Shown piece by piece: positions 4,939 to 63,842 of a stretch of 64,000 nt of DNA. How positions within the stretch are numbered: the first letter of the stretch is position 1; each line of letters opens with the position of its first letter. Below the pieces are notes generated by a model. The model saw nothing but the letters and a program-made list of their open reading frames with translations. It was not told the DNA's origin and did no database searches. A program made the position numbers and the translations under genes. The stretch spans positions 14,880,001 to 14,944,000 of the forward strand of contig NC_047062.1 of assembly GCF_902459465.1 (NCBI RefSeq), written 5' to 3'. The stretch comes from Asterias rubens (lineage: Eukaryota).

Positions 4939-5185
4939 AATCTCGGGCTGTGACGTTGCAATAGAAAGTTCTGTGGCGAAGCAGACTTTTGTATTATAGT
5001 AGTCACCAGCATAGGCGCAACATCGACTGGCTCGAATGTTAGTGCGCTAATAATTATATCCCTTCGAATGTAATTCTAATGTTGCGGCCATTTTCTTGAT
5101 CATTATTGTCAAAGACCCGTATTCTCACTTGGTTGGTGCATGGTGTATTAGGCAGGAAATAAAACATGTGAACATTTCGAATCAA

Positions 5186-5332
5186 TTGGAGACTTTCCAA
5201 CGCTAGGTGGCAGCAGACATACCGGGTAAATTTCCATTGTTTACGTAGTTCTGAACATGCGCATAATTCTGAGAACAATGGATTTACCCGGTAAGTCTGC
5301 TGCCCTCTATCGTCCCAGAAAGTCTCCCATTG
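5186..5332. mobile_element. Small palindromic MITE (related copy at ~28785-28918)
   Basis: GGAGACTTT..CTAGGTGGCAGCAGAC..GGTAAAT..ATTTACC..GTCTGCTGCC..AAAGTCTCC inverted structure; a similar sequence lies at 28785-28918. Confidence 0.6.
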
Positions 5333-5996
5333 GTCGTCGATGTGAGAGAATGAATACAATTCAAATGTTTTAGTGAGAATTAACTTCTTTCTCAAAAACT
5401 ACGTGGCTTCAAAGTGAGCCGTTTTTCACAATGTTTTACCATCAACAGCTCCCCATAGCTCGTTAGTAAGTTTCTTAGCGAACAATTATTTTGAGTAATT
5501 ACCACGGTGCCCAGTGGGTGTTTGGTCGTGAGATTTTGCACCCATTTGAAATCATTAACGTTTGACGAGGAGGATGTTTCAAACGAGGGAGCTGAGAAGA
5601 AGTTTGTACACCGTTCGCCGCGTACTTTGTTGATTTTGTTAGAGGTGTGGGGGTACGGGGGCAACTGAATCTCTCCTGCCAAACAGTACCGGTGTCGCAT
5701 GCAATTATGTTCTCTATGTAATACTATACGGAGGACATTATGCATATGCAATAATGTCCGCCGGACGGGTTTTGGATATGCAATCGTGTCCGCCCGGACG
5801 CTGCTGCATAATGCAATTGTGTCTGCCCGGACACATTTGTATATGCAGTTGTGTCCGCCCCGTGCAAAACCTTGCAGTAAATTAAACGCCCTTGGTCGAC
5901 GGAACACGTTCTCATTTTTGTTTTACAAGCGTGGAAAATATTCAGCCGTTGGGTATTCGCTGCAATCACAAACTACGTGAATAATTCATGTTGCAT

Positions 5997-6472
5997 TGAA
6001 AAGAAGGTGTACTTGAACTTTGATTTATTGGTGATCATATACCCGTGGTTCTATAGAGAAAGCAGAAATTAACCCCAATCAATTATACATATTGGGCTGG
6101 TAACAGTAATCATCGTTATACATTATACGCTATGATATGGGCCTACATGCATTTATATGCATTGTCACAATGTGGATGTAAACAAATCGAAACGTGAATT
6201 ACATGGAAAACCAACTTCCCTTAAAATCACCCTTTGTAATAATTAAAACAGTACTCACGATTAGGATGCACGCACGGGACTTTGGTGATTAATAGAAGTG
6301 ATTCGATGATTGGATTAACCTGGATATTTAGGAATTATTTGAGGAATTTACGTGATTAGTTTGGATTTGGACTTGTAAAATGGCGATTGGTATGATCATG
6401 GAAACATTGGAGATTTTGATTCAAGAGAGGGCGCTATAACGAAAACTGTCCTGTTGCGGAGACTTTCTGACA
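5997..6472 (-). repeat. 3' LTR (476 bp)
   Basis: Direct repeat of 12650-13125; no mismatch found on visual alignment. Confidence 0.95.
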
Positions 6473-6484
6473 GCCACCCCAAAT
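6473..6484 (-). other. Polypurine-tract-like site of the BEL element
   Basis: Minus strand reads ATTTGGGGTGGC immediately before the 3' LTR TG. Confidence 0.55.
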
Positions 6485-6545
6485 TTAGGCTCTAAATTTT
6501 ATCAAACAGAGAAAGTCTTCAAAAGTCCACGATAGGTGTCCAACT

Positions 6546-14093: not shown

Positions 14094-17000
14094 TCACCCG
14101 CGAGGTGGCCGGTGATATCCTGCTCTGAGCACCTCTTGAAGCTCACTCCAGCTGATGGATTCGTCGAGGCGTTCCAGCATGCAAAACTTGTTAATTTTGA
14201 TGCTGGTGTCCTCGTTGCCAAGGATGATTTCGCTTACTGTCACTTGGTAGTTCTTGCCGTTGTCGCACAATACGAAGCTATCTGACGTATGTGCTGAATC
14301 TACGTTGTAATCTGATGGAGAGATAATCATGGAAAGGTCCTCTAAATTGCTCAATTTTGGCTACAAACTCAGCTGCCTTTTTCTCTGCAAACTGATGTTT
14401 GTTGTAAACACACATAACAACTTTTTAATCAATACTTTGTGTGGCCCACATTCCATCATCTGCAAGTATCGGAATGACATGAAACAAGTGCCCCCCCCCC
14501 CCCCCCCCCACTCTCCCCATGATGTTTTCACTTATGTTTTAGTGTTGGAGCTCGAAACATGCTGACTCATTTTTATTTTATTTTTAGCATTTAAGGCCAA
14601 TTTGCGTACATTTTTGTTTGCGGTTACTTTATTATAATACAAAGGCCAGGGAAAACAACATGAATAAATAAGGTAAAAATAAGAAGTATATGCCTTCTAA
14701 ATATAAAAATTGCTACTTTAAACAAGAAGAGCACGTGTTTTAGGTTATTTTATTGATGCAATTATGTTGAATTACCTGGAACCGTTTCTTTAAAAACTCT
14801 GTCTGTTTCGACATCCACTGCAAAGAATGCTTCTCCGTTTGTGTAATTTACTTCGGCGAAAATGGTGTCTAGGCATACATTAAATAAATGAAAACAGAGT
14901 TATTATCATGAGGTCATATCAGAGACACGGGTCTGTATGACCCAACTTGCTGGGCTGTTATTTTTTAAAGCCATTGGACACTTTCGGTACAGAAAAAAAA
15001 GTTCACTGATTTACAAATAACTTACAGGGTTTACAGCACGTAATGGAGAAAGACTTCTCTTGAAATATTATTACATGAAATGCTTTACTTTTTGAGAAAA
15101 CATTAGAACAATATCAATTCTCGATATCGAAAATTCAAATTTCTTTTAAACGTATGTCATGACACGGCGAAACGTGCGGAAACAAGGGTGGGTTTTCCCG
15201 CTTTTTTCTCCCGACTCCGATGACCGATTGAGCCTAAATTTTCACAGGTTTGTGATTTTATATATAAGTTGTGATACACGAAGTGTGGGTCTTGGACAAT
15301 ACTGTTTACCGAAAGTTTCTATGGCTTTAACATCGGTCGTGTCACAAGACCAATGTTAAAGGCACTGGACACTATTGGTAATTGTGAAAGACCAGTATTC
15401 TCACTTGGTTTATCTCAACCTATGCATAAAATAACAAACCTGTGAAATTTTGAGCTCGATTGGGGTTGGAGTTGCGATATCACTATGAAATAAAAAAAAA
15501 ACACCCTTGTCACACGAAGTGGTGTGCTTTCAGATGCTTGAATTCGAGACCACAAATTCTAAACTTGAGGTCTCGAAATCAAATTTGTGGAAAAGTACTT
15601 CTTTCTTGAAAGCTAAGCTACTTCAGAGGGAGCCGTTTTCACAATGCTTTAAACTATCAACCTCTCCACATTACTCATTACCATGTAAGGTTGTATGCTA
15701 ATAATTATTTTGAGTAATTACCAATAGTGTCCACTGCCTTTAAAGGCATCGGATACGTTTGTATTGCCAACGACCAGTATTCTCACTTGATGTATCCCAA
15801 CATTATGTATAAATAACCAATGTTTGTAGGATTTGAGGCATTGCATGGTGAGGTATCAATGTATATTTGGTTTGCGGTAACACCATGTGTGTATCTACTT
15901 GCCAGGTAGAGTTGTTCTTAGGGAACTGTCTTGCTTTATTCTACTGCCGTGGAGTAGATCGATGTGTGTATCTACTTGCCAGGTAGAGTTGTTCTTAGGG
16001 AACTGTCTTGCTTTATTCTACTGCCGTGGAGTAGATCGATTATCTCTACTCCACGGCAGTAGAATAAAGCAAGACAGTTCCCTAAGAACAACTCGTATAC
16101 CTGGCAAGTAGATACACACATGGTGTTACCGCAAACCAAATATACATAACCAATGTTGCGAACAAGTTCGGCTGAATTGGTCATCGAAGTTGTAAGAGAG
16201 TAATATGACAACCGTGCGTGCACAAATTGGTGTGCTTTCAGATGCCATCACAAATTTTTGAGTGCAAATTATACTTCATTCTCAAAAACTAATGCTACTT
16301 CAGAGGGAGCCGTTTCTCGCATGGTTTTATATCAACAGCTCTTTAATGCTCGCCACCAGGTAAGTTTGTATGTAAGTAATTACCAGTAGTGGTCCGTGCA
16401 TTTCAAAGAGAGCCATAACAGCCAACAACGAGGGCTAGGGTCCGTTATAGGATGTAGGCCCAACATAGAATGCATGGGTTAGGGCACCGAATTCTCAACA
16501 TGTAAAAAAAAGTCAGATTTCCCCTCTGTGCTCCATTTTGTTAACAATTTTAACAATGAGCTTCTGTCTTCTTACGAAATGAAAATATTGTTGAGTTTCA
16601 AAATGAAAAACAAAATAATAGTAACAATAAAGCATAGACAAATGAAAAGTAGTTTAAAAAATAAGTGATTAATCTTGATTAAACAATAGTAAACATATGG
16701 ATTGTTTATAAATACAGAAATGTGTGGAATTAAATCTTATGTACATACCCTCGCTACAAGGTGACGACATCACATAGTAGCATGCAGATTGTATGCAAAC
16801 TTCCTCAGTTATCTGGAGACAAGCTAAATACAAGAAAACATTGCGAAGAAGTTATAATTAGGCCTACACTTACAGCATTTCGCATGACGGTGTTTCTGGA
16901 AGAATCCCGAAATCCTGCTCTAAAGAACTGTCATCCGTGTTTCAAAGGCTGTTTCAGTGGTCTCTTGACTATAACATAATTTCAAAAAATTGTGAAAATT

Positions 17001-48411: not shown

Positions 48412-50554
48412 ACATCGACCGTTTAAATGTCCCTTTGAAAGATGAAATCATGAAAGGGTTTGGAATCCCCGCCATGCTGCACCACATTGAAGCTACACTG
48501 ACAGCCACGATGTTTAGGAAATACTGACTTGAGTCTGTTTAAAGTGAAGATAGAGATCGTGAATGGCACAGCTGCTATTCTAGAAAGATTTTTCGTCATT
48601 CAGATAAGGATTGAACTGTCTGAATCACATGTTGCACTGGATGGATGCCTTTTGTAGGAAGAACAAAAGTATGGCTTTGTCAGTAGAAAGTGCTTTGTTC
48701 ACCGTGTAGCCATGGATACAGAGAGTGACATCATTATCATAAGTGATAAAACTGCATGGAGATGTTTGAGCATTATGTAAACATACAGCAAGGATGAATT
48801 ACATGTCATGGCTGTGTGATGGTACACCTACATGTACATGTAGTTTCAAATCTTATCTACATGTACATATGTACATCTACATGTTTACTACTGAGTGTAG
48901 TGTGATTGAAATACTAATGTGGGATCCATGGACAATATGGATAATTTACATTTTTTTATGTCAATCACTTTGCACACAGGATAGAATAAGCTGTCATTTT
49001 TGCAAGGTGCTTGATTTTAAACATACTGTAATGATTATTTGCATCATGTAATATATTTTTAAGATGAGACTAATTTTATAATTGTGATAAATGAAAATTT
49101 TGTGTACACATGCTGACTTGTGCAATGTTGGAAAACCCAGACTTTCAGGCATATTGTAACAAGTCATGGGTCATGTGTTTACAAATAACAAACCTTGGGC
49201 CCTAAATTTCAAATAGAGAGCTGAGAGCACTATGTGCTAAAATGTCCTGCTGCTTGCATTTTTTTAACGGAACCACTTTACATGTCAAAGTGCAGTTTGA
49301 GGTATACATGTAGTTGTCACTGACTCACATCAATCTATAAGGAAAACCCCCAATATATTTTGCAATAATCTACATGATATACTAAGTCCACATCATTTGT
49401 ACATGTATGGCCAGCACTAAGCTGCATGGGTGTGAATAGAATAATATTATTATTATTCTGAGCTTATTCAAGTTCACAGAGAGATAAAAAACATGCTCAA
49501 ATTCCTAAAAACAAAGAATAAAAGATACTCACACAAATACTCGCAAGTAAGAATTATCTCTGGGCGATTTAGATTTTTTGTATCTTATGGTTTGGTAAAG
49601 AGGACTGGTGAGTTGGTTCGAGTTCCGAAGATTGTTGGACCACCATGGGCTTACACAGACGATGACAGAGTAAGCCATTCTCTGTGAATCTGAATCTAGA
49701 AGTTATCTTTTGTGTCTTATTTTATTTTTTATTTGAAATTAACCATCTGTGGGACGCAGGATCCTCAATGGAGTGGGGAGATCAGAGAGCTATTGACCAG
49801 AGCACTTAATCTAGATTCCACCAGAAGCACACATTTTTTAAGCATCCTGAATTTACACTTGTTTGAGGCTTGTTCATGAATTTCTAGAAACCATTTATAG
49901 GTTTAAATTTTCACAGAGATATCACATTTGTGTTGACATTTACATACTTGCATATTTGCGTTATGCTCGCAAAAGTTGGCACATTTACTGAAAGGGGTAA
50001 AAAAAACACTGCTACATAATTGCCATACAGCTGTACAACATTTTATGCTCTTACCTAGGTCTGTACACAAACATCAAAACACTTACCCAGCTACATGTAT
50101 TGCATGATAGAAAAATGCATCAGATGGCATCATAACTCATTAGACTGAATAATCTAAGGGAAATATTTCTGAACTTGGGCTTGTAATGCTTTGTTTTTGA
50201 AAGGCCAAGGGCACCAGGGCATTTTCTCATTGGTAGAGGGCACCCTACCGGACCTTTTCAAGGGCACCAAGGCAATGACCAGGGGGCACGGAGAGGAGAC
50301 AGCCTTCATGAAGTATCAAGCCTGTCTAAGTGTCAGAAGGAGTTACTCGGGAGCAGTAGCTGGCTGGTATCACCAAACACCTTGTAAAATTTAAATACAT
50401 CAAGAAGATTAGAGGTCAGGGTTGAGAGGTTAGAGTTAAGAGGTTAAGGTTGATGCAGACTTTCAACTTGAAAGTCTGCATCAAACTGCTTCTAATAGGC
50501 CTTTCCATTGTTGATAAACAAATCAAGCACTCAATCTGTTATCATATGTTTTAA

Positions 50555-50959
50555 AGGGTATCTGTACTTTTTCCTTTAAAAAAAAACACAATGTCCACAG
50601 ATTTACATTAAACTTACACAGTTTGAAGATTATGATAGTAGAAAGCTTCCCTTGAAATTTTACTTACTGAGGTGCTGTAGTTTTTGAAAGATGAGTAAAA
50701 GTAACAATTTTTGTCTCAGTTTTAGCATGTAAAAACTTATTAACCAGTTATGCTATGGTTTTGGTATAATATTATAACTGGTTATGGGGATTTGACATGC
50801 TAAAATAATTTTGGTCTCATGTGACCAAAATTCTTTTGTGACTTGTTTCACTCAACCTTAGTTAGTAATATTTGAAGGGAAGCTTTCCACTATCATTATC
50901 TTCAAACCCTGTAAATTTAATGTAAATCTGTGGACATTTTGAAAAAGTACCCGAATCCT
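50555..50959. mobile_element. Kolobok-type MITE family B
   Basis: TTAA|AGGGTATCTGTACTTTT...AAAAGTACCCGAATCCT|TTAA. Relatives lie near 14965-15355, 35670-35830, 57470-57800, 61790-62060 and 63200-63340. Confidence 0.8.
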
Positions 50960-53900
50960 TTAACCAAATCAAACATTTTCTGCAAACCATGAAATAAATA
51001 AAATACCTCCCATGATTGCTTGCTTTGTTTCCAAAAAATTCAACATTATGTTTGAATATTTGTGTAACCTTCTTACAAACAGTAGCTATATGTTTTTGCT
51101 TTGCATTTATTGCTTTCCATAGTTTTCCAACGTTGGTTGGCAAAACTTAGGCTGTGATGTTGCCACAGCATGTCTATACAATTACCTTAGGAAGTCTCTG
51201 GTTGACTGGTACAAGTTGTGGCATTGTTTAGTTAAAGACAGGTTTGAGCGTATTGTGCACCAGTCTTTTTTGAAGTGTATAATTAATATTTAATTAATGA
51301 CGGAAAAAGTATTGTTTATATTATTTGAAGACACATTCGTTGTTTTATTGTCAACTTTATGTTTGAGAGGTACTTCACGAAGACGACAAGTTGGTGTGAA
51401 TTCGGAAGTAATTGAATTGAAAGAAAGGTACATTTTTAGGCAGTTTAGTTGATTACATGACAACTAAAAATGTGAAACTAATTGCAGTCATACTGTGAGG
51501 AATGATTTGTGCACTCAGTGCCAGTGTGTGTTAGCCTTGTGTTGGCCTTATAATAGTTCCATGACTCTCCAACCGTGTAGTCATAAACACATTTACGTCA
51601 GGCAATTAAAAAGTGTTTGCATGAACACATTTTGTCACAAAAACCTTGTGACTTCATGTTTTTTGTGATTATTATGCAATTGGTGCATTTGGGAACAAAC
51701 AATCTTTGGTGTGTACATTAAATAAGGGATGTTGCAATATATATCATGTACGATGTGCATAGTTTTGTACGATGTGCATAGTTTTGCACTGTAACAAAGA
51801 ATGAACCATAACAAATTTTAGTGATAATTTTCACCTTTTTCCGCTTGTAATTTCCTTTTTGTTAATTTACTGTTTTAGATGTCATTAGATTTTATGTGTT
51901 TCTTAATTTTCCAATTGAGTAATTAAATTAAGAAGCTGATTGAGATTGTATACCATTCTGTTGATTTTTACTTGATCTGGTTACTTTTCTTTCAAAGTTC
52001 TAGACTTGATTGACAAGACTGGTTTTTTCGTTTGTCATGGGCAACGTGGACTGGCCTGGACAGACTGAGCAAGTTTATGAATCTGGTGGTATTATTGTTT
52101 GTTTGATACTTATCTGTAAGTCTTCTCTAGTAAATTCTATTATGACTATCTGCGACTACGTAAACGAAACAAACGTCTCCAATCAAGACCAACAAAATGC
52201 CTACCAAGAAATACAGTAGTATTTCATTTGTATAGGCAGGACAAATCCTGGAGTCACTTCAGGGAGGTAAAAGAGACATTTGCCTCCTTACCCCTGGCTG
52301 GTCATTGCCCCAAAATGTTCCAGTACAAATTATTCCCCAAGGGACCTTACAAGAATGTTGTAATCATTACAAACTAAGTTGGACTTAAGATTATCAGTTG
52401 TCTTTGGTAATTGCTCAGGATAATTTTCAGAATAACTTATTTGGTAACGAGCAACGGAGAGCTGTTGATAAAAACTGTATAAAACATTGTGAGAAATGGC
52501 TCCCTCTGAAGTATTTTAGGTTTTAAGAAAGAGGTAGTTTCTCACTCAAAGGACTTCAGGTCTGAAGCCTTTTATGAAGCATCTGAAAGCACACAAGTTT
52601 GTGCAACAAGGGTGTTTTTCTTTCATTGTTTTCTTGCAACTTTGATGATCAGTCGAGCTCAAATTTCACAGATTTGTTATTTTATCCACATGCTGAGATA
52701 CACCAAGTGAGAGTAGTCTTTGACAATTACCGAAGGTGTCCAGTGCCTGTCTGTGAAGAAAATTTAGTAAAATTTACCAATTTTAGTTGGTTTCAAGAGC
52801 TGATGTTTGAAACAGATAAAACTGACCTCTGATCTCAATTACTTTATGATTGAAATTACTGCGCTTTGGTTTGCACACAGAAAGGAGTTACTTTTCAAAA
52901 AGGTATTTGATGTCCGAAAGCATCTAGAAGTTCTGAGCAAAATGAACATTGAGCACAAAACATAAAATCTGGTAGAGTGGTTCCGAATGGTGTAGTTTAT
53001 TATTTCTTGAAGTATTTAGGGCTGATATTGATTGCATTTTTTTTTTATGGCAACTTTGTGGAGCCCTAAATACATGCAATCTCATTTATACCATGGCCAG
53101 TGAATTATAGTAATTGATTTCTCAGGAAGGAATGGTTTGATTAATTTACTAATTATTTCATCAATAATGCTGAAAGCTATAATGGTGCAAAGTTCCAATC
53201 TGTCCTTGATGAACTTTTAATAATTATCAGCATAAATTGGTTGCAAGTTGAGAAACGGCTCCATCCGAAGTGACGTGATTTTCGAGAAAGAAGTAAAGTA
53301 ATTTTCCACGAATTTTATTTCGAGGCCTCAAGTTTAGAATTTGAGGTCTCGAAATCAAGCATTTTAAAGCACACAACTTCGTGTGACAAGGGTATTTTTT
53401 TCCGTTTTTAGTTATTTCGCAACTCCGATGACGGATCGAGCTCAAATTTTCACAGGTCTGGTTGAGATACACCAAACATGAGAAGATTGGTCTTTGACAA
53501 TTACCAATAGTGCCTTTAGGGAATGTCATGTGGGGTTAAAAAAATTGTAGAAAAACAAAATCAAGCGTGCACACTTTCAAAAATAAGGCCGAGAATACAC
53601 TATGACTTAGGATGTTGCTTTTTATCCTCACACTGCATTGAACAGTGTTCATGAAAAAAAGTACAGGTACATTTGGTTTGGATGTTTTTTGTATGATTTC
53701 ATAAATAATCCCAAAGGGCTTGAAAATTCAGGTACGTGGCTAAGATATTGTCGTTATATGATTTTATTGTGATTGGAGGGGCCTGGGTTGCAGTTGTCTG
53801 TATCTCAAACTCTACTTTTAGTGAACAGGTTAAAGGATTCGTGTACTTTTTTCAAAACGCCCACAGATTTCCATTGAACTTACAGGGTTTAAAGACAACT

Positions 53901-53962
53901 AAGGTTGTGTAGTTTTTGAGAAATGAGTAAAACATTTGTCACAAAATAGTTTTGGTCTTCCT

Positions 53963-55433
53963 AGGGATGTACCAGAACCTAAACGAAAGGACGTACGGAA
54001 ACCTAAATAGGACGTATGGTAAATGCTCGGGCGTGTAACCAGAATTTTGATTGGTCACTCGATACTCTTGCACCAGCAGCACTGCCTGTCCCCTCATTAC
54101 TGGAACGTATGCAAATCTTTATTGTCCGAGAGGCGGTCTGAAGGGCGCACCACGACCAGGCCCAGATTAACCTGTATCCCTATTGTCCAATTGTGGCGCA
54201 CTAAGGATGGGCATACCTCCCACAGAAGAGATAGTCGTGTGCAGTGGGACAGCTTAGAGCCGACGCACAGTGGGCCAGAATGGGATGTAAGTGCGCCAAA
54301 AATATAAATCATTAAGTTTTGTGCATGAAGGTTCACCTACTTAGCTTTTCCGACCCGTAGAATCCAATGGTGATAATTAGATCGGAGTATGACGTCAGCA
54401 AAATACCGATTTTTGATTGGTCCTGATGTAATGGACTGTTTATCGCGGTTAAATTGTGACTAATTGCTTGCATCTGTGAATAATTCTAAGCAACCACGAC
54501 AAGAGTTTTCAATGTTTGATGCATCATCAACAGAACTAACAACTTCAAATAATCGCTTTCTTGATGAGGACGCCATCGTGCACTGTGGTACAGCTGACAG
54601 ATACATTTAAAGACAACTAGCGGCAGTATCCCTCATCACAACATACGAGACACCAAGTACATTAAAATTTCAACTGCGCAATCAGACATAAATAGGGGTA
54701 TCATATTGCACCTTTCCGGCGAGCGCAGCCTTGCTTGGGTGTCGTGTTTCTCAGTGGAGCGCGCCATATGTAATAATCAGAAAAGGGGCGAAAACGTACA
54801 GTGATCGCTTCAGAAAAACTGCTCTAAAACCGTGTATCGCAGGTTGTCGCAGCTAAATTTGGTACCAAAATGATGCAAACAAGTTGCTCTATTAGAAATG
54901 AGTAGACTTTAGGCAGCAATCGACGGCAATCTTTAGTTTCCGTATTGCTGAACACAGAAAACGTAAATTTAATGTCAATGTTGACACAATTGTCAGTATT
55001 TATTCATAGAAAACTTCAACAAAAATAAAAACTGATTTAATTTCCTTCAAATATGAACTAGAGCCAAGTGAAAGTTTAGCTCCGTAACTCAATGCAAGGT
55101 GTCTAATTTTGCTTTATGAAGATTTCTGCAACTATTTTCATTTTATGGCCAATTTCTGTGGATTTGCATACCTTTAAGAGGTCATGACAAGTCAATATAT
55201 ATATTTTTTGCTTAATTTCCCCATAAAATTGTCCCATGGGGTATAAGCAACCTCAAAAGTGTTGAAAAAATTAAAACTAGCAGGGTCACGTTTCACCCTT
55301 TTTGGCGCACTTTGGTTTCGGCCTGGCCCACTGTGCGACGTTGGTTGGGTTCAACCCGCCAAATTGAATTGAGTGAAGTGTAGAAATTTTAAGGTTTCCG
55401 TACGTCCTTTCGTTTAGGTTCTGGTACATCCCT
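53963..55433. mobile_element. Non-autonomous TIR element with 42-bp TIRs and a 3-bp TSD (CCT)
   Basis: AGGGATGTACCAGAACCTAAACGAAAGGACGTACGGAAACCT at the left end and its exact reverse complement at the right end; CCT at 53960-53962 and 55434-55436. Superfamily uncertain (a 3-bp TSD suggests Harbinger-like). Confidence 0.8.
54266..55335. mobile_element. Transib/RAG-transposon-like non-autonomous element with RSS-like bipartite TIRs
   Basis: Both termini read CACAGTGGGCCAG-N10-AAGTGCGCCAAAAA; perfect 5-bp TSD CGACG (54261-54265 and 55336-55340); no long ORF inside. Confidence 0.85.
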
Positions 55434-57259
55434 CCTGAGACCAAAATTATTTTAGCATGTAAAATCCCCTTAGCATGTTATGAAATTATACCAAAACCAT
55501 AGCAATAACTGGTTAATACATTTTTACATGTTAAAACTGAGACGAAAATTATCACTTTTACTCATTTCTTAAAAAATACAGCACCTAAGTAAATTTCAAG
55601 GGAAGCTTTCTACTATCACAATCTTCAAACTGTGTAAGTTTTATGTACATCTGATTCTGTAGACATTGTGTTTTATGTTAGGAAAAAGTACATATACCCT
55701 TTAATGCCTTGTTATTACTTGCTTGTCATTGCAAACTTGCAGTAAAAATCTACCATCATTTTTCATGTTAACCATCCTCTAGGACTCGCACTCGAGTTTG
55801 CTATTTAGAGTGTATTCACCATGTCTTCTTTATGAAGACGAGCTGTACTGGCAGATTTCATAAAGATTTCGAGCTGACTAAACCACTTGAGAGAAGCGAA
55901 AAGTTACCACCATAATGAAGGCCTATGGACTATTTCTTTTGTAACGTCACACAGCCCGAGTTTTTGCCAACCCTGGTTGGGTAACTATGAACAGCCATGG
56001 ATGCAAATCAAAAACAGATATCTACTGTTTGTAAGAAGGTTACACTTTTGGGGAAACCAAGCAAACAATCATGGGAGGTATTTTATTTACTTGAAAAATT
56101 GCAGAAAAAGTTTAGTTTGGTTATCTGAAGAACCTGGGAAATTATCTACACACTTTCGTCCTGGGGAAAAATAGGCGACTTTTACAGGACGAATGTGGGT
56201 ATCTGCCCACGTTCGTCTTGGGAATAAAATACGCCACCCGGATGAGCACACCGGGGTCGACCCGGGGAAGCTAATTGAACGCACCCAGTGCAGTGTGCAT
56301 TGTATACTTTGCATTATGGGTAAAATGTTTCCACGAGGAGCAGTTTACCCAATTGCGTGCAACATTGTACCACAAAGAGAGCATGTCCGGCTTTTTTTCA
56401 GTCACTCGCAAGGTAAAACTTGACCCTTTGGCGAGGAAAATGTGTTGTACACTTAAGTTGCTTTCACTGGCAGATATTTTAAAGCAACTTTTAAGTACCT
56501 TTTTTTTAAAAGGTACAAATTATTTTCTCGGTAGGCCTATACATAGCCAACTCGCCACGTAGCCCAACATATTAAGAAGGTAGGCTACTCAACGTTCGTA
56601 CCCAACAAATTTAATCAGCAAGTTTTTACACGTCTTGTTTTTGTAGAAGTTGAACGTGACCCCTTTTCTTCCTCAATATCCCTTTAATGCTCTCACACGC
56701 TATGGAGTTGCCATTCAGTCTTTTTAGAAAATTTCATCCAAGCTTTTTATTGAAGGACATAACAATATTGAGGTCTATGGAGGAGTGGGGCCAAATTAAT
56801 CGAGCTGCATGATGCAATTACTGACATGAACGAATTCTGCTGAGCTGAATAAATTAAGGTTACCAGCGAAAAGGGCGCATAAGCATTTGTGACATGGTTC
56901 CCTACAGAGTTTCTTAGAGTTTTGATAAAAACCTGGCTCGCGGTAAAATTAAATTGGGCATGCAGCAAGGGTTTTTTCTGTTGCTGTGGCAACGGTTGCT
57001 CATGCAACTGTTTGATCCGCGTCGTTTGCTTGCCTAATTGCCGAAACATAACAGTCAATGGGTCTAACGAGCAAACTGGTAGGCAACCAGTAAACATGTT
57101 TTCAATGGAAACCTTTGGATAATCAACAGTTAAAAAGACATGTTGAATTAGTGACTATTGTTTCTAGAGTCACTGATTGCTCTTTAGAAAAACAGCACCG
57201 GGATCTTCAACTATCGTTGTCAATGGTTGGGCGTTAGCACAGTTGTATTCACAGCAACC

Positions 57260-60200
57260 ATGACGTTCTTCGTGTTACTTCTTACGTGTGTAATTGTTGC
57301 TTCAATTGCTGTAGAAGGTGAGATATGTTCTTATGCGTCTTTAAACTGATTTGGTGATCCATTTGAACGGTTTAGCAAACCATTCGCAATGTTTGATTCA
57401 ATTCAAAATACTCATTCAAAATTCCAAGCTATGTTAATAAATTCAGTTGAGGGTCTATGTAGGCCTAACTTTTGTAGGACAAAAACACAATTTCCACAGT
57501 TACTCTAAACTTACACAGTTTGAAGATATTGATAGTAGAAAGCTTCCCTGAAAATACTACGTGCCGAGGTGCTGTAGTTTTTGGGAAATGAGTAAAACAA
57601 TGTCATGCAAATAATTTTCGTCTCATGAGACGTACATTATTTTAGTCATTTACAAACGTATTTTCATGACATTGTTTTACTCATTTCTCAAAAACTACAG
57701 CACCTCAGTAAGTAAGATTTGAATGGAAGCTTTCAACTATCATTATCTTCAAACCCTGTAAGTTTAATCTAAGTCTGTGGACATTTTGAAAAAGTACCCA
57801 AAATCGTAAAACAGCAATCATTTTGCATGGTTTGGTAATCCCTTTATGCTTTAGTAATTTGAAATTGTTGGCATGAAATAGTAATCCGTTTGCATTATTG
57901 TGTAATCTTTTTGCGTGGTTTATTAGACTGTTTCTCATGAACAGGTGCTTATAAACTGCTTGTGGGTTAAAGACACTGGACACTATTGGTAATTGTCAAA
58001 GACCAGTCTTCTCACTTGGTGTATCTCACAATATGCATAAAATAACAAACCTGTGAGAATTTGAGCTTGATGTGTCGTCGGAGTTGCGAGGTAACCATGA
58101 AAGAAAAAAACACCCTTGTCACACGAAGTTGTGTGCTTTCAGATGCTTGATTTCGAGACCTCAAATTCTAAACTTGAGGTCTCGAAATCAAATTCGTGGA
58201 AAATTACTTCTTTCTCAAAAACTACGTCACTTCAGAGGGAGCCGTTCCTCACAATGTTTTATATTATCAACCTCTCCCCATTACTCGTAACCAAGTGAGG
58301 TTTTATGCTAATAATTATTTTGAGTAATTACCAATAGTGTCCACTGCCTTTAAGTATCCAACAAATTATATTCTAATGCCCGCATATATTTGTTCACTGC
58401 CGCTTGAAACGCAGATTACGTAAATAATAATGTTCAAACTGATCAACCGCGAGAATGGATTATTTCAATCAATAATGCAATGTAGTTGATTTGTTATAAT
58501 AGCCGCTGAAGCGACACTTGATTAATATAAATACTTTTAAACCATTTGAGTTTTTAATTCCATACCCTTGAATGTGTCCAAGATCGCAAAATAATTTATT
58601 GTGCACCCAAATAACCCATGCACTCAAAAACATAATTATAAGCGCTCAATTATAGCCGGTGTCGCATGCAATTATGTCCTCTATGCAATACTATCCGGAG
58701 GAGGACATTATTGCATATGCAATAACGTCCGCCGGACGGTTTTACATATGCAATCGTGTCCGCCCGGACGCTGCTGCATAGTGTAATTGTGTCCACCCGG
58801 ACACATTTGCATATGCAGTTGTATCCGCGTGCAAAACCGTCCTTGCAGTAAACTAAACGCCCTTGGTCGACGGAACACGTTCGCCATTTTTTTGCAAGCT
58901 AAGTGCATGTCATGAATAACATGGGAAATGTCGGCCGTTGGGTATTCGCTGCAATCATAAAATACGTGAATTATTCATAATGCATAATACGTAGGTTCAG
59001 CGCATGAACGCTCGCTTACGCGCGCACATACTGTACATATACAGTCATGTACATGTCCGCCGGTGTGTCCGCTCCGGACACTTTTGCATATGCAATCGTG
59101 TCCGGGGCTATGCAAAATCCGTCCGGTGGACATGTACATGACTGTATATGTACATGTATGTGCGTGTGTAAGCACGCGTGCATACACTCAACTTACTTAA
59201 ATGCAGCATGAACATTCACGTATTTTATGATTGCAGCGGATACCCAACGGCCGAACATTTCCTATGTCATTCATGACATGCACTTTGCTTGTACAAAAAT
59301 GAACGTGTTCCGTCGACCAAGGGCGTTTACTGCAAGGACGGTTTTGCACTTGGATACAACTGCATATGCAAATGTGTCCGGGCAGACACAATTGCATTAT
59401 GCTGCAGCGTCCGCGCGGACACATCTGCATATGCAAAACCGTCTGGCGGACATTATTGGCGGACATGGTTGCATATGCAATAATGTCCTCCGGATAGTAT
59501 TGCATAGCGGACATATTTGCATGCGACACCGGATGGTTTTTGCATAGCCCCGGACACGATTGCATATGCAAAAGTGTCCGGAGCGGACAGTATTGCATGG
59601 CGAACACAATTGCATCTGACATCGGAAATAATTTCGAGTACACGAAGTTATTTCGAGTACACATAGTCCAATATTTTTAAACCACGACATTTGAATCTGA
59701 GCTTGAAAGTGGTTCATATCTTAGAGATGAGTTAGAAAGACGAATTTTAGTTGCACAAACAATTTACATGCGCTGTTTTCTCCCATTTTGCCGAAATGGA
59801 AGTTACGAATTAGTAGTGTGAATACCGAATGAGCTCAGCAACTAGTAGTTTCTCCATTGTTCTTCTGTAGGCATAAGTGACAATAAAATAATGATCAAAA
59901 TATGCCTCAGAAAATGCAGGCATTTGAAACAGGATTTTGATCGTTTTTCATGTATGCAGTTCTGTGTGCACCAACACAAAGTGACTCACATGTACATAGT
60001 TTTCCTCAGGTGCCGTGAACATGACGTCACGGGTTACTCCCTACCAAGTGCGATTTGGAAAGGACGGTCGGCCGCTCATGGAGGATTTCGAAAAAAGGAC
60101 GCCTTGCGGACAAGGTAAGCATAAACCTTCATTGGTAACGAGCAATGGGGAGAGGCTGATAGTATAAAACATTGTGAGAAACGGCTTCCTCTGAAATAAT

Positions 60201-63200
60201 GTAGTTTTCGAGAAAGAAGTAATTTTCCACGAATTTGATTTCAATACCTCAGATTTAGAATTTGAGGTCTCGAAATCAAGCATCGGAAAGCACATAACTT
60301 CGTGTGACAAGGGTGTTTTTTTCTTTCATTATTATCTTGCAACTTCGATGACCGACTGAGCTCAAATTTTCACAGGTTTGCTATTTTATGTATATTTTGA
60401 GATAGGCCTACACCAAGTGAGAAGACTATCTCAATTACCAATAGCGTCCAGTGTCTTTAATCCAGGTTTAGTACATGCAATTAAGCTCGAGTAATTGCCT
60501 GTCTCTGTAATTTATTACTATTTGTAACGTTAAAAAGACATTTTAATTCAGTCTTAATGGAACACGTTGCCTTGGATCGGTCGAGTTGGTCTTTGAAAAG
60601 CGTTTGAAACCGTTTAAAAGATGTTTTAACCCTCTAGTCACTGCACCGCCCGAGTTTCTGAAAACCAATTTTTCAAGATTCTTGCAGTAAACAACTGGAA
60701 TCATAGTTCAATTTTTAAAAGATAGCTTAATATTTATGCACAATTTTTTACCCTTTCTGTAATGTTTGTATAAAAGTACAAGCTCCCATTGGGAACAATA
60801 ATCGGCTCTCGAATATTTTTTTGTAAAGATAAAATGGACACAATAGCTTGTACTTTTATACAAACATTACCGAAAGGGTAAAAATTTGTGCATAAATATT
60901 AAGCTATCTTTTAAAAATTGAACTACGATTCCATTTGTTTACTGCAAGAATCTTGAAAAATTGGTTTTCAGAAACTCGGGCGGTGCAGGGACTAGAGGGT
61001 TAAAAGTAGAATATAATGACCCACACAAGTATCAATCGAAATTGCGTGGCATTCCTTTTACCTCGTCGACAAACACGGTCGGCATTTATGGGAGTCAACA
61101 ATTTGACTCCCAAAAATGGTCGACAGTGTTAGTTCGCAATTTCGAGGCAAATGTGTGTGGATCATTGTATTCTACTTTTAGAACATCTTTCTAACCATAT
61201 GCATTTTATAATAAACGGTTACAAACGCTTTTCGAAGACCAACTCGACCGATGCAATGCAACGTGTTCCTTTAAGGTATTGTAAACAAATTACTGAAGCT
61301 CATGAAGCAAAACTATAAATAATTTTAGTTCTCGAGAAATGTTGACATTGTTTTGATTATTTACTGACAGCACCTACTGCGGCGTTTAATGAAGCTCCTC
61401 GATCGCCATGTGACACCTACCATACGAGTGACAGTGACGTCAGGTTATACCTGTTGAATCATACAACTATCTCATTCCCCGTGAGACTGGATTTCACTCT
61501 CAAGAATCAAGAGGCTAACTTGACTGAGGTGCGCTTCATGGGAAGAGTGAACGGTGATGTGGTCTACACTGTTAGTGAGTATAACGCTCTTTACACATTA
61601 TTTTGGAAGATAGGCCTACAACACATTTTTTTTAATGGGAAAGTCAAAGTTGAAGTTTGAAATTCGAAATTCGAGGGTCGCGATTCCGATTAAAAGCGTT
61701 TGCAATAAACAAACATTTACAGTGTTGAAGGTTAACTTGAAAGCAATTAGTGCGAATCGAAAACTAAAATCTCCACGAACATCTATTTAATGTCCACAGA
61801 TATACATTAAACATACACAGTTTGAAGATTATGATAGTAGAAAGCTTCCCTTGAAATGTTACTTACTGAGGTACTGTAGTTTTTGAGAAATGTGTAAAAG
61901 TAATAATTTTCGTCTCAGTTTTGGTTTTAGCATGTAAAAACGTATTAACCGGTTATGCTATGGTTTTGGTATAATATCATAACTGGTTAAGGGGATTTTA
62001 CATGCTAAAATAATTTTGGTCTCATACGACCAAAATTATGTTGTGACTTGTTTTACTCTTTTGGGCCAGTGATCTTCCTAATTATGATAAATGATGCTGC
62101 CATGACAACCGGAAAAAGATGGAAATATGTCGACGACCTAACAATTGCTGAAATCACCCACAAGTCACGTACAAAACAGTGATTTACAAACCCATGTGGA
62201 TGCTGTGTCAGAGTGGAGCCATACTAACTCTATGAAACCCAAGGCTGAAAAATGTAAAGTCATTCAAGTTAGCTTCTTACACAGTGACATCCCTACTCCT
62301 GTGATCGCAATGGATAATCAAGTTTTAGAATCTGTGTCTTCACTGCGGCTGCTTGGTGTGATAGTCCAATCTGATCTTAAGTGGGATCTTCAAGTGCAAC
62401 AAATGATCTCGCGTGCATCTCGCCGATTGTACATCTTAAGCAAATTGAAGCGGAATGGTGTCCCTCTTAATGATCTTATCTAAATATATACTGCGTACAT
62501 CCGTCCTCTACTTGAGTTTGGCGCTCCTGTGTGGAGCAGTAATCTAACAAGTCACCAGTCTGTTTAGTATTGAAAGGGTACAACGAAGAGCTCTTCGAAT
62601 CATCATGTTTCCTGACCGGCATCATTATGAGGATCTCCTGATAGATATTGGTATTCCCTCCCTTGCATCAAGAAGAACTGAAATACTTACAAACTTTGCC
62701 AAATCTATCACAATCTCAACACGACACCGAGATTTGTTCCCCCCTGAACGCCAAACACTCTCCCGCACTTGACTGAGAAACTCACACAACATTCACTTGC
62801 CCCTAATGAGAACTCAGAGATATAAAATGTCTAGTGTTCCAGCATTAGTGAGACTGTATAATAATCGTTGATTTCATCAACAAGTATCTCTAACAGTTGG
62901 GTTCAGTTTTATCAATTTTTTTTTCAAATTTGATCAATTTCTTTTTTAAATTTGGTCAGAGTTTGTTGTCTTTTGTAATTTTTAATAATAAAAATGAATT
63001 TTCAGTTTTATCAATTTTTTTTCAAATTTTTATCTTTTTATGTGCATTCATGCCTGGAGCTTTTCTTCTCTTCTTTTAAGTCAGAGTTTGTTGTTTTTTG
63101 TAATTGTTAACAATAATGAATGTAAACACGCCAGTTTAAGTCTTTTTAACTTCTGTCGTGTATTTTGTGATATTTTTTAGAAACCTTAATGAATTGAATT

Positions 63201-63842
63201 GAATTGAATTGAATTTCTCAAAAACTACGCAACCTTAGTTAGTAATATTTGAAGGGAAGCTGTCCACTATCATTATCTTCAAACCCTGTAAGTTTAATGT
63301 AAATCTGTGGGCATTTTGAAGAAGTACCCAAATCCTTTAAAGAGGCACAAGTTTTGGGTGTAATGAATAATGTAATATACTTTGGTTGTGAAGAAACATA
63401 AGGCCTATAGCTGCATGTATTGTTTCTAAAACGTTGTCCTAATAGAACAACAGAGACGATTTAAAATTGGTCGATATTTCTATAAAAAAAATCATGGTTT
63501 AGCATTACATGGATAGCACGTGTTGGAAATTAATGTATTTAATGCTTACGCAAGAAAACAAATACTCACGAAATTTATATTTTGCCAGAGTTTACACGTG
63601 GTCAGGGTGTTGGTCTTAAAGGTTTGAATGCACACATGGACCTTCAGTTTGATGGATCTCATCGCTTCTGGGTGACTTACGAGAATGGTGAGGTAAAGGT
63701 GGGATTACACGGCCGCAATGGCGAACCGCTGCTTCACTACACCGATCCGAATTTCACGACAAATCAAGTGCGCGTTGTTGAGTTGCACTCTAAGACAATA
63801 ACTCGAACTGAGTGGACGGTTTATCAGCCATGCTTTAAGTAA
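57260..63842 (+). CDS. Secreted protein with a divergent farnesoic acid O-methyltransferase-like (Methyltransf_FA-like) domain, 206 aa, 4 exons
   Basis: Exons 57260-57317 (signal peptide MTFFVLLLTCVIVASIAVE), 60010-60114, 61371-61574 and 63589-63842, all phase 1 and GT-AG. HRFWVTYENGEVKVGLHGRNGEPLLHYTDPN resembles the FWxxW..G.I.VG..G..P.LSW.DP pattern of this domain (from memory). Confidence 0.7.
57971..58349. mobile_element. Kolobok-type MITE family A
   Basis: TTAA|AGACACTGGACACTATTGG...CCAATAGTGTCCACTGCCT|TTAA. Confidence 0.85.
58660..59621 (+). mobile_element. TGT..ACA/CCGG MITE copy 4, containing inverted copy 5
   Basis: CCGG|TGTCGCATGCAATT at 58656 and AATTGCATCTGACA|TCGG at 59608-59625. 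Confidence 0.8.
59064..59528 (-). mobile_element. TGT..ACA/CCGG MITE copy 5, inserted in reverse into an internal CCGG of copy 4
   Basis: The host site reads CATGTCCACCGGACGGTTTTTGC in copy 1. Here it reads CATGTCCG-CCGG-[TGT...GCGACA]-CCGG-ATGGTTTTTGC. Confidence 0.7.
60558..61270. mobile_element. Kolobok-type MITE family C, host of the piggyBac-type MITE
   Basis: TTAA|TGGAACACGTTGCCTTGGATCGGTCGAGTTGG...CCAACTCGACCGATGCAATGCAACGTGTTCCT|TTAA. Confidence 0.7.
60630..60999. mobile_element. piggyBac-type MITE, 370 bp, ~155-bp TIRs
   Basis: TTAA|CCCTCTAGT...ACTAGAGGG|TTAA; arms near-identical with few mismatches. Confidence 0.88.
62061..62850 (+). pseudogene. 5'-truncated, decayed non-LTR retrotransposon RT (L2/CR1 group)
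   Basis: GPVIFLIMINDAAMTTGKRWKYVDDLTIAE, then LRLLGVIVQSDLKWD...ASRRLYILSKLK and YIRPLLEFGAPVWS, with stops and frameshifts. It truncates a family-B MITE at ~62060. Confidence 0.88.

What the first reader, a model, noticed from the sequence alone, without database searches (positions are those of the whole stretch)
54261..55340. Non-autonomous element with exact RSS heptamer, 23-bp spacer, nonamer-like motif and 5-bp TSD (Transib/RAG-transposon-like MITE)
Seen: both ends begin with CACAGTG. The TIR is bipartite: a 13-bp terminal block (CACAGTGGGCCAG), 10 bp that differ between the ends, then a 14-bp block (AAGTGCGCCAAAAA). Exactly 23 nt after the heptamer both ends carry CCAAAAA(TA/GG), and the TSD CGACG is perfect. 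Established: V(D)J RSSs are CACAGTG-12/23-ACAAAAACC, RAG and Transib make 5-bp often GC-rich TSDs, and RAG-like/Transib transposons occur in echinoderms. Inference: this is a MITE mobilised by a Transib or RAG1L(-RAG2L) transposase using a symmetric 23/23-like signal, closer to the vertebrate RSS consensus than most invertebrate TIRs I recall. The right end also has a weak ACCAAAGTG at 12-nt spacing.
Basis: partly seen in the sequence, partly recalled or inferred. Interest (0 to 1): 0.85.

Follow-up and report, generated by a model that had tools for sequence, protein, structure and literature searches.

The report
Non-autonomous Transib transposon (MITE) copy
This is a 1,070-bp gene-less "hitch-hiker" copy of a Transib transposon, the jumping-gene family from which the antibody-gene recombinase RAG1 and its signal sequences arose; its antibody-signal-like ends are real, but they are the published, typical architecture of this family, so the element is ordinary.

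Summary
Element 54266-55335 has CACAGTG tips and a bipartite TIR: a 13-bp block, 10 variable bp, then a 14-bp block. CCAAAAA lies 23 nt after the heptamer at both ends, and the TSD CGACG is perfect and exactly 5 bp. There is no ORF over 48 aa and no Pfam or Rfam match.

The kind is now shown rather than guessed. The same bipartite end (CACAGTGGGCCAG, 9 variable nt, AAAGTG[C/T]GCCAAAA) bounds autonomous elements in Strongylocentrotus purpuratus, Diadema, Amphiura, a sea-star contig and marine metagenome contigs. These encode a single ~700-aa transposase matching Helicoverpa Transib transposase (PDB 6pqn, E 1.7e-99) and barely matching RAG1L (6e-4). Complete elements have exact 5-bp TSDs (CGCCG, CGCCC), and all flanks are CGNCG-like. 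Across 15 ends the two blocks are near-invariant, the spacer varies in sequence and its length never changes.

Contigs from public runs indicate more than one copy: their matches stop at the TIR tips, and the window copy is about 1.3% from a full-length contig.

This is a non-autonomous Transib, not a RAGL or Chapaev element. Heptamer, 23-bp spacer, A-rich nonamer and GC-rich 5-bp TSD is the Transib consensus published in 2005, so novelty is low. First readers of this scan noted similar Transib-type MITEs on other pieces of this genome (unchecked).

The parts
54261..54265 (.). Left copy of the 5-bp target-site duplication, CGACG
   Evidence: identical to 55336-55340. The flanks match for k=5 only.
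54266..54302 (+). 3'-type terminal inverted repeat: heptamer CACAGTG (54266-54272) within invariant block 1 (54266-54278), variable spacer (54279-54288), and conserved block 2 AAGTGCGCCAAAAA (54289-54302). The nonamer-like CCAAAAATA lies at 54296-54304.
   Evidence: It is 32/36 identical to the TIR of the sea-star autonomous element L003 and 30/36 to the L006 3' TIR.
54387..54422 (+). Conserved 36-bp subterminal motif (contains TGACGTCA and ATTGG), 121 nt from the tip
   Evidence: the same motif, with 5-9 mismatches, occurs 3-4 times at roughly 144-bp spacing. It lies in the 3' part of the autonomous elements L005 (S. purpuratus) and L006-L008, and inside L013 (Amphiura). The tip-proximal copy lies 131 nt from the tip in L005 and L006.
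54303..55298 (.). Non-coding interior of the element
   Evidence: the longest ORF is 48 aa and the longest open stretch 68 aa; no Pfam match; no Rfam match; no protein homologue; no similarity to the autonomous elements beyond the TIRs and the subterminal motif.
55299..55335 (-). 5'-type terminal inverted repeat: block 2 at 55299-55312, spacer at 55313-55322, block 1 with the heptamer at 55323-55335
   Evidence: It is 33/36 identical to the 5' TIR of the autonomous element L006, including 7/9 spacer positions.
55336..55340 (.). Right copy of the 5-bp target-site duplication, CGACG
53830..54007 (.). Context: left arm of the very abundant inverted-repeat (MITE-like) host repeat into whose central region the element inserted
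   Evidence: inverted pairs I1, I3, I5; paralogues in the window at 50551-50965, 57507-57797, 61797-62024 and 63213-63340; summed word depth is hundreds to thousands of times that of the flanks.
55389..55704 (.). Context: right arm of the same host repeat

Best explanation
The element at 54266-55335 is a non-autonomous (MITE-like) member of a Transib DNA-transposon lineage found across echinoderms. It encodes nothing.

It keeps the two about 36-bp ends that the lineage's transposase recognises. Each end has an invariant 13-bp tip containing the cleavage heptamer CACAGTG, a 9-10-bp spacer of free sequence but fixed length, and a second conserved block AAAGTG(C/T)GCCAAAA. It also keeps one copy of a conserved 3' subterminal motif.

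By inference from the characterised Helicoverpa Transib enzyme, a roughly 700-aa RAG1-core-like DDE transposase supplied in trans by an autonomous copy binds both ends. It cuts at the CAC tips by the nick-hairpin route and inserts the element into a GC-rich CGNCG-type pentamer, which is duplicated. Here that pentamer is CGACG, inside another repeat.

Shown: the anatomy, the exact 5-bp TSD, the TIR shared with transposase-encoding Transib elements, the conservation pattern of the TIR, and signs of more than one copy.

Inferred: the cleavage chemistry, mobilisation in trans, and the presence of an active partner in this same genome.
For: - Anatomy and TSD.
- Not chance.
- Non-coding.
- The same bipartite end occurs next to a Transib transposase gene. 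L003 (a sea-star contig) has an open frame that matches PDB 6pqn with E 6.4e-35.
- The full-length protein P0001 (707 aa) matches 6pqn with E 1.7e-99, against 6e-4 for amphioxus RAG1L 6b40.
- Its contigs, and those of relatives from S. purpuratus, Diadema antillarum, Amphiura filiformis and Tara metagenomes, carry CACAGTGG(G/T)(C/T)CAG, 9 variable nt, then (A/C)AAA(G/C)(T/G)G(C/T)GCCAAAA at their tips.
- TIR profile over 15 ends: mean information is 1.93 bits at positions 1-13, 0.55 at 14-22, 1.79 at 23-36 and 0.47 beyond. No spacer-length variation was seen.
- Exact 5-bp TSDs occur in the complete elements L005 (CGCCG) and L013 (CGCCC). L009 has 4/5. All eleven flanks are CGNC(G/C).
- Polarity: the right end matches the L006 5' TIR at 33/36. 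The left end carries the 3' subterminal motif at the same distance from the tip as in L005 and L006.
- More than one copy. Contig matches end at 54264-54266 and 55336-55337, and some run on into unlike sequence (34, 40 and 441 letters). In run X10, 18 contigs cover position 54288, against 1-2 contigs at positions from 54564 inward. Element depth exceeds the depth of the unique flank: 14.6 against 2.9 in X5, and about 1400-2500 against 80.6 in X10. One full-length 1117-bp contig differs at 14 letters plus a 7-bp indel.
- Literature: the Transib TIR consensus is heptamer, 23-bp spacer and A-rich nonamer; 5-bp TSDs are unique to Transib; targets are GC-rich (PMC1131882). Hztransib gives invariably 5-bp TSDs and uses a nick-hairpin mechanism (PMC4840297). 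Transibs with intact TIRs occur in many echinoderms (PMC10629977).
Against: - No second copy and no transposase lie in the 64-kb window.
- The autonomous elements with this TIR come from other genomes. Their loci share no repeats with the window, so an active partner in this genome is not shown.
- No empty-site allele appeared among the joints listed by read laying (most rows were not shown).
- The copy-number estimate rests on Logan contig word depths from runs of unknown library type and is rough.
- Apart from the TIRs and one 36-bp motif, the interior has no similarity to the autonomous elements. Its origin as a deletion derivative is therefore not shown.
Confidence: 0.92

Rival explanations
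1. It is a non-autonomous RAGL element, mobilised by a RAG1L-RAG2L pair such as ProtoRAG, TransibSU or RAGL-A rather than by a one-gene Transib transposase.
For: It has CAC-heptamer tips and a GC-rich 5-bp TSD, which RAGL transposons share (PMC7204232). PflRAGL-A TIRs have a heptamer, a conserved adjacent region, a spacer and an AT-rich nonamer-like part (PMC10629977). Earlier notes of this scan report RAG1-like genes in this genome (unchecked).
Against: - Every transposase-bearing element found with this TIR encodes a single protein that matches Hztransib at E 1.7e-99 and BbeRAG1L at only 6e-4.
- Those elements have no second long ORF. The 4.1-kb L006 holds only the 707-aa gene.
- Positions 8-13 are GGCCAG, not the A-rich TR2 of RAGL TIRs. 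The protostome consensus is CACTWMCAAAC... and TransibSU-1_PM has CACAGCGAAAAAT.
- The ends are symmetric 23/23, unlike PflRAGL-A.
- According to PMC10629977, no RAGL element with intact TIRs is known in echinoderms.
Confidence: 0.03
2. It belongs to the Chapaev/CMC (EnSpm-Mirage-Chapaev) group, which also has CAC...GTG tips. According to earlier notes of this scan, elements of that group in this genome have bipartite ends.
For: CMCT lineages share 5'-CA..TG-3' termini (PMC12730594). An earlier follow-up in this genome described a Chapaev with two recognition blocks per end (s1-150105).
Against: - The TSD is exactly 5 bp here and in the complete relatives L005 and L013. A 5-bp TSD distinguishes Transib from all other superfamilies (PMC1131882). 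Chapaev/CMC make 2-4 bp; this figure is from my own knowledge, and one search gives only the range 2-5 bp for the whole CMCT clade.
- The transposases next to this TIR are Hztransib-like along the whole catalytic core.
Confidence: 0.02
3. It is a chance inverted repeat with a chance 5-bp direct repeat, and not a mobile element.
For: Only one copy lies in the window.
Against: - Fifty shuffles gave no such pair with a TSD.
- The same 27 conserved TIR positions bound transposase-encoding elements in at least five other sources.
- Contig matches from four public runs end at the tips.
Confidence: 0.005

Closest known systems
Transib superfamily non-autonomous elements (e.g. TransibN1_SP of the sea urchin, TransibN1-3_AG of mosquito; Kapitonov and Jurka 2005, PMC1131882)
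   Same: The tips are 5'-CAC...GTG-3' with an RSS-like heptamer. The TIR is about 38 bp, built as heptamer, 23-bp spacer and A-rich nonamer-like block. The TSD is exactly 5 bp and GC-rich. The element has no coding capacity and is about 1 kb long. It is inserted into another repeat.
   Different: The heptamer is exactly CACAGTG (the insect consensus is CACAATG). The second conserved block is 14-15 bp (positions 22-36) rather than a 9-mer. The lineage-specific tip is CACAGTGGGCCAG. I could not compare it with Repbase entries, so whether this particular family is already catalogued is unknown.
Hztransib of Helicoverpa zea (active Transib; transposase structures PDB 6pqn and related entries)
   Same: The transposases that sit between TIRs of this type match it at E 1.7e-99 over residues 7-459 of the solved chain. 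It makes 5-bp GC-rich TSDs.
   Different: Hztransib TIRs have little or no nonamer similarity (PMC4840297), whereas this lineage has a fixed CCAAAA at nonamer positions 1-6. The echinoderm proteins are only 33-40% identical to insect Transibs.
V(D)J recombination signal sequence (23-RSS)
   Same: The heptamer CACAGTG is identical (7/7). The spacing to an A-tract is 23 nt, and the A-tract covers the critical nonamer positions 5 and 6. Nonamer identity is 6/9 at both ends of the window copy.
   Different: Both ends are of the 23 type, with no 12/23 asymmetry in any of 15 ends. Sequence conservation extends into what would be the RSS spacer (positions 8-13 and 22-30). It is a transposon end flanked by a TSD, not a signal next to a gene segment.
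RAGL transposons (ProtoRAG, TransibSU-1_PM, PflRAGL-A)
   Same: CAC tips, GC-rich 5-bp TSDs, and a RAG1-fold DDE enzyme family.
   Different: There is no A-rich TR2 after the heptamer, no RAG2L partner in the autonomous relatives, and the spacers are symmetric.

Membership tests
Transib superfamily (non-autonomous member) | Target-site duplication of exactly 5 bp | tested here: met
   the window has CGACG/CGACG, matching for k=5 only. Relatives with the same TIR: L005 CGCCG and L013 CGCCC are both exact; L009 is 4/5.
Transib superfamily (non-autonomous member) | 5'-CAC...GTG-3' termini with an RSS-like heptamer, and a TIR of about 38 bp built as heptamer, about 23-bp spacer and A-rich nonamer-like block | tested here: met
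   compared with the published consensus (PMC1131882).
Transib superfamily (non-autonomous member) | GC-rich target site | tested here: met
   all 11 flanks beside TIRs of this type read CGNC(G/C), although the window is 36-40% GC around the site.
Transib superfamily (non-autonomous member) | TIRs shared with an autonomous element that encodes a Transib transposase | tested here: met
   this is met in S. purpuratus, Diadema, Amphiura, a sea-star contig and Tara metagenome contigs. It could not be tested in the window's own genome, since only 64 kb of that genome is available.
Transib superfamily (non-autonomous member) | Repeated in the genome with different flanks (a mobile family) | tested here: inconclusive
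   contig matches stop at the tips and some run on into unlike sequence; contigs fan out near the tip (18 contigs at 54288 in X10); depth exceeds that of the flank. However, no flank sequences were returned and the library types are unknown. Unchecked first-reader notes report similar elements elsewhere in this genome.
RAGL transposon (RAG1L-RAG2L) | Autonomous partner carries convergent RAG1L and RAG2L genes | tested here: not met
   elements with this TIR hold one Hztransib-like gene and no second long ORF.
RAGL transposon (RAG1L-RAG2L) | Conserved A-rich TR2 directly after the heptamer | tested here: not met
   positions 8-13 are GGCCAG in 13 of 15 ends. RAGL consensus sequences are given.
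Chapaev / CMC | TSD of 2-4 bp and a Chapaev-type transposase | tested here: not met
   exactly 5 bp; Transib-type enzyme. The 2-4 bp figure is from my own knowledge; one search gives 2-5 bp for the whole CMCT clade, with 5 bp being Transib.
V(D)J RSS pair | 12/23 spacer asymmetry between the two partners | tested here: not met
   all 15 ends have the same spacing, of the 23 type.

The most novel reading that the evidence does not exclude
These Transib MITE ends have an exact RSS heptamer and a fixed A-tract 23 nt away, and they seem to have been kept almost unchanged across sea urchins, brittle stars and sea stars. They could be natural substrates of the host's own domesticated RAG1L-RAG2L proteins as well as of the Transib transposase. 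That would be the 'guardian of the genome' idea of PMC8355894, in which a RAG-like recombinase excises Transib-type elements. Nothing here tests it. The evidence only shows that such ends exist, in more than one copy, in a genome where earlier notes of this scan report RAG1-like genes.
Probability: 0.04. Interest if true: 0.8.

Novelty: new member of a known kind. Interest (0 to 1): 0.25.

Why it matters
The element adds little that is new. It is a clean, apparently young (about 1.3% from a full-length contig of the family) non-autonomous copy of a Transib lineage whose end architecture was described in 2005.

Three by-products are useful.
- A TIR profile for an echinoderm-wide Transib lineage. 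Two blocks (13 and 14 nt) and the spacer length are fixed, while the spacer sequence is free.
- A clear CGNCG target preference.
- A conserved subterminal motif carrying CRE-like and CCAAT-like sites.

Together with the intact roughly 700-aa transposases found in marine metagenome contigs, these give a defined enzyme and substrate pair from deuterostomes. That pair could be used to ask how a Transib enzyme reads a nonamer-like block at fixed distance, which bears on how RSS recognition evolved.

Tried and rejected
- **Other copies in the window.** Searches with both TIR blocks and blastn of the element found none. The exact 14-mer at 29183 lies in an unrelated ORF and is a chance match.
- **Paralogous empty site.** The host repeat has paralogues in the window, but none covers the insertion point.
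- **Empty-site allele in public runs.** No joint skipping about 1075 bp was among the rows shown. Most rows were hidden and only one read-laying run is allowed, so this is not evidence of absence.
- **First metagenome scan.** The full 27-base TIR pattern gave 0 hits. The shortened pattern gave 4 hits. One of these, L001, is a chance match in GC-rich DNA and was discarded.
- **Viral contigs.** 0 hits.
- **Fetching other copies through small ORFs of the element.** Exact look-ups failed, and a homology search with the longest open stretch found nothing.
- **Pfam and Rfam on the interior.** Nothing. No tandem repeats.
- **Published sequence strings.** A full-text search for the 13-mer returned only unrelated papers. 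The supplements of PMC4411706 do not hold this TIR, and no supplements are held for PMC1131882, so I could not compare with TransibN1_SP.
- **Identifying the source organism.** Run names are coded, and the atlas search of a neighbouring ORF was uninformative on taxon. The S. purpuratus, Diadema and Amphiura loci share no repeats with the window. The host is a marine animal but remains unnamed.
- **Papers on Chapaev TSD length.** PMC3093488 and PMC2727372 are not held.

Full report
**Observation.**

- CGACG occupies 54261-54265 and again 55336-55340.
- The element between them (54266-55335, 1,070 bp) starts with CACAGTG and ends with its reverse complement.
- Both ends carry an identical 13-nt tip, CACAGTGGGCCAG.
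- Ten nucleotides follow that differ between the ends.
- Then comes an identical 14-nt block, AAGTGCGCCAAAAA.
- Exactly 23 nt after the heptamer the ends read CCAAAAATA (left) and CCAAAAAGG (right).
- The flanking direct repeat is exactly 5 bp. The flanks do not match for 3, 4 or 6-8 bp.

As a chance control I scanned the window for every CACNNTG...CANNGTG pair within 12 kb. This is the only pair with at least 22/38 TIR identity and a TSD of 5 bp or more, and 50 shuffles gave none.

**Content and setting.**

The element is non-coding.
- The longest ORF is 48 aa and the longest open stretch 68 aa.
- No Pfam family, Rfam family or tandem repeat was found.
- The 68-aa stretch has no homologue among 5.8 billion proteins.

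It sits in the central part of a larger inverted-repeat element (arms about 53830-54007 and 55389-55704). That element belongs to an extremely abundant repeat family, with other copies in the window. Its summed contig depth in public runs is hundreds to thousands of times that of the neighbouring sequence. Insertion into another repeat is typical of Transib elements (PMC1131882).

**Evidence for more than one copy.**

The window holds a single copy. I laid Logan contigs of four public runs on 53600-56000.

The match of several contigs to the window stops at the TIR tips:
- X5 record 20: a 1,117-bp contig covering 54265-55336, with 34 further letters that do not fit the window.
- X8 record 26: starts at 54264.
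- X8 record 27: ends at 55337, with 40 more letters that do not fit.
- X1 record 4: ends at 55337.

In run X10 a contig matches the unique left flank (53600-53883) with one mismatch. In that run 18 different contigs cover position 54288, which is 23 nt inside the tip. Six cover 54326, four cover 54450, and only one or two cover positions from 54564 inward. This is the fan-out expected where one repeat meets many flanks.

Per-contig word depth inside the element is about 1,400-2,500, against 80.6 for the unique flank in X10. In X5 the figures are 14.6 against 2.9. Library types are unknown, so I read this only as several to tens of copies.

All runs share the same alternative letters at about 14 positions, plus a 7-bp insertion behind 55055. 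The window copy is therefore about 1.3% from the sequence those contigs share.

No joint corresponding to an empty site was among the rows shown.

**Finding the transposase.**

A scan of metagenome contigs with the full 27-base TIR pattern found nothing. A pattern without the A-tract found four contigs.
- L001 is a chance match.
- L002, L003 and L004 carry the whole bipartite end.

In L003 the end is followed, inside the element, by an open frame of 444 aa that runs off the contig. This frame matches the solved Helicoverpa zea Transib transposase (PDB 6pqn) with E 6.4e-35. L003 is held by runs labelled starfish and echinoderm metagenome, and its flank encodes an animal-type open frame containing WGWGGEDDE.

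A homology search with this frame returned 219 proteins. The top group, 51-71% identical, includes entries named from Strongylocentrotus purpuratus, Diadema antillarum and Amphiura filiformis, plus intact 695-719-aa proteins from marine metagenomes. Insect and other Transib-like proteins follow at 42% identity or less.

The intact 707-aa protein P0001 matches 6pqn with E 1.7e-99 over residues 7-459 of the chain. It matches amphioxus RAG1L (6b40) only at 6e-4.

**The same ends bound those transposase genes.**

I fetched the encoding contigs and searched them for the tip.

| Locus | Source | Element | Ends found | TSD or flank |
|---|---|---|---|---|
| L005 | S. purpuratus | 4728-9609, 4,882 bp | both | CGCCG, exact |
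| L013 | Amphiura filiformis | 5266-12133, 6,868 bp | both | CGCCC, exact |
| L009 | metagenome | 3,950 bp | both | CGCCG / CGACG (4/5) |
| L006 | Tara metagenome | 4,102 bp | both | right flank only; the contig starts at the left tip |
| L007 | Logan contig | – | one | only 3 nt of flank held |
| L010 | metagenome | – | one | CGNCG-like |
| L012 | Diadema antillarum | – | one | CGNCG-like |
| L014 | Tara metagenome | – | one | CGNCG-like |

Every flank next to such a tip reads CGNC(G/C), a near-palindromic GC-rich pentamer, in DNA that is otherwise 35-40% GC.

I aligned 15 ends without gaps.
- Positions 1-13 are almost invariant (mean 1.93 bits).
- Positions 14-22 vary (0.55 bits).
- Positions 23-36 are conserved as AAAGTG(C/T)GCCAAAA (1.79 bits).
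- Conservation is lost beyond position 36 (0.47 bits).
- The spacing never changes.

It shows that the bipartite design with a fixed-length, free-sequence spacer belongs to the whole lineage and is not an accident of one copy.

**Polarity and a subterminal motif.**

The window's right end is 33/36 identical to the 5' TIR of L006, including 7 of 9 spacer positions. The left end is closest to the L003 TIR (32/36) and resembles the L006 3' TIR (30/36).

The left end also carries a 36-nt motif, 121 nt from the tip, that contains TGACGTCA and ATTGG (54387-54422). The same motif occurs three or four times at roughly 144-bp spacing in the 3' part of L005 and L006-L008, and inside L013. The tip-proximal copy lies 131 nt from the 3' tip in L005 and L006.

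The element therefore has the same polarity as an autonomous copy read on the window's minus strand. It retains more than the bare TIRs. What the motif does (a transposase or host-factor site, or a promoter) is unknown.

**What it is and how it works.**

The element is a non-autonomous Transib. The autonomous relatives hold one transposase gene and no second long ORF, so there is no RAG2L partner.

By inference from Hztransib, the enzyme acts alone and cleaves by a nick-hairpin mechanism. It always makes 5-bp, GC-enriched TSDs (PMC4840297). On this reading the transposase binds the two ends, cuts at the CAC tips and inserts into a CGNCG pentamer.

The chemistry, mobilisation in trans and the existence of an active partner in this genome are all inferred. 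The copies in the S. purpuratus and Amphiura reference genomes have fragmented frames.

**Rivals.**

- **RAGL element.** This is disfavoured. RAGL TIRs carry an A-rich TR2 directly after the heptamer: the protostome consensus is CACTWMCAAAC... and TransibSU-1_PM has CACAGCGAAAAAT. Here positions 8-13 are GGCCAG. The associated enzyme is Transib-type, and PMC10629977 reports no RAGL element with intact TIRs in echinoderms.
- **Chapaev/CMC.** An earlier follow-up in this genome found a Chapaev with bipartite ends, which raised this rival. It is excluded by the exact 5-bp TSDs and by the enzyme.
- **Chance.** This is excluded.

**Comparison with what is known, and novelty.**

Kapitonov and Jurka (2005) defined the consensus Transib TIR as 38 bp: CACAATG, a variable 23-bp spacer, then AAAAAAATC. 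They noted 5-bp TSDs unique to the superfamily and GC-rich targets, and listed non-autonomous families including one from the sea urchin. Later work states that Transibs with intact TIRs occur in many echinoderms.

The finding is therefore a new member of a known kind, at most. I could not check Repbase, so the family may already be catalogued.

First readers of this scan noted several look-alike Transib-type MITEs on other pieces of this genome, one with a CGNCG flank. I could not see their sequences, so they are leads, not support.

**Limits.**

- Only 64 kb of the source genome was available.
It is a marine animal; the TIR lineage is echinoderm-wide, but loci from three echinoderm genomes share no repeats with the window.
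- The copy number is rough.
- TSDs of other copies of this particular MITE family were not seen.

Noticed in passing
window:7067-12691 (- strand): An uninterrupted 1,874-aa ORF encodes a BEL/Pao LTR-retrotransposon polyprotein. Pfam matches are DUF1759, RVT_1, Peptidase_A17 (E 6.6e-47) and Integrase_H2C2. It is apparently an intact retroelement.
   Followed up: partly
window:53830-54007 and 55389-55704; paralogues at 50551-50965, 57507-57797, 61797-62024, 63213-63340: The host of the insertion is a long-armed inverted-repeat (MITE or foldback-like) element of an extremely abundant family. Summed contig depth in public runs is hundreds to thousands of times that of neighbouring sequence, and many contigs join 53934 directly to about 55436-55445, which are shorter family members.
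   Followed up: partly
window:54387-54422; L005:8707-9478, L006:3651-3971, L013:10018-10251: A conserved 36-nt motif carrying TGACGTCA (CRE-like) and ATTGG (CCAAT-like) is repeated at roughly 144-bp spacing in the 3' part of autonomous Transibs from a sea urchin and metagenome contigs, and inside a brittle-star element. It is present once in the window's MITE. Its function is unknown: a subterminal binding site or a promoter module.
   Followed up: partly
L006-L011, L014-L017 (marine and Tara metagenome and Logan contigs): Intact 695-719-aa Transib transposase genes of the echinoderm-type clade sit in short marine metagenome contigs, some bounded by complete TIRs. They are candidate active deuterostome Transibs. 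L011 (P0003) has a divergent tip, CACCGTGAGCTAG.
   Followed up: partly
L003:2136-2591 (- strand): The flank of the sea-star Transib contig encodes an open frame containing WGWGGEDDE. From my own knowledge this resembles the conserved motif of beta-1,4-galactosyltransferases. It confirms that the 'metagenome' contig is animal DNA.
   Followed up: no
window:29153-30361 (- strand): A 402-aa ORF has atlas neighbours that are Exo_endo_phos / sphingomyelin phosphodiesterase clusters from bacteria, fungi and ciliates, with no Pfam match at E 0.01. Another first-reader note (s1-175577) already flags it as a bacterial-type sphingomyelinase. The exact 14-mer AAGTGCGCCAAAAA at 29183 lies in its 3' end by chance.
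   Followed up: no
window:38632-39918, 58250-60176, 15881-16125, 60563-61265: Other inverted pairs have 33-35/38 identity and begin with CACAATG, CACCATG or CACGTTG at the scanned position, but have no TSD there. They are probably internal parts of the TIRs of other DNA-transposon families.
   Followed up: no
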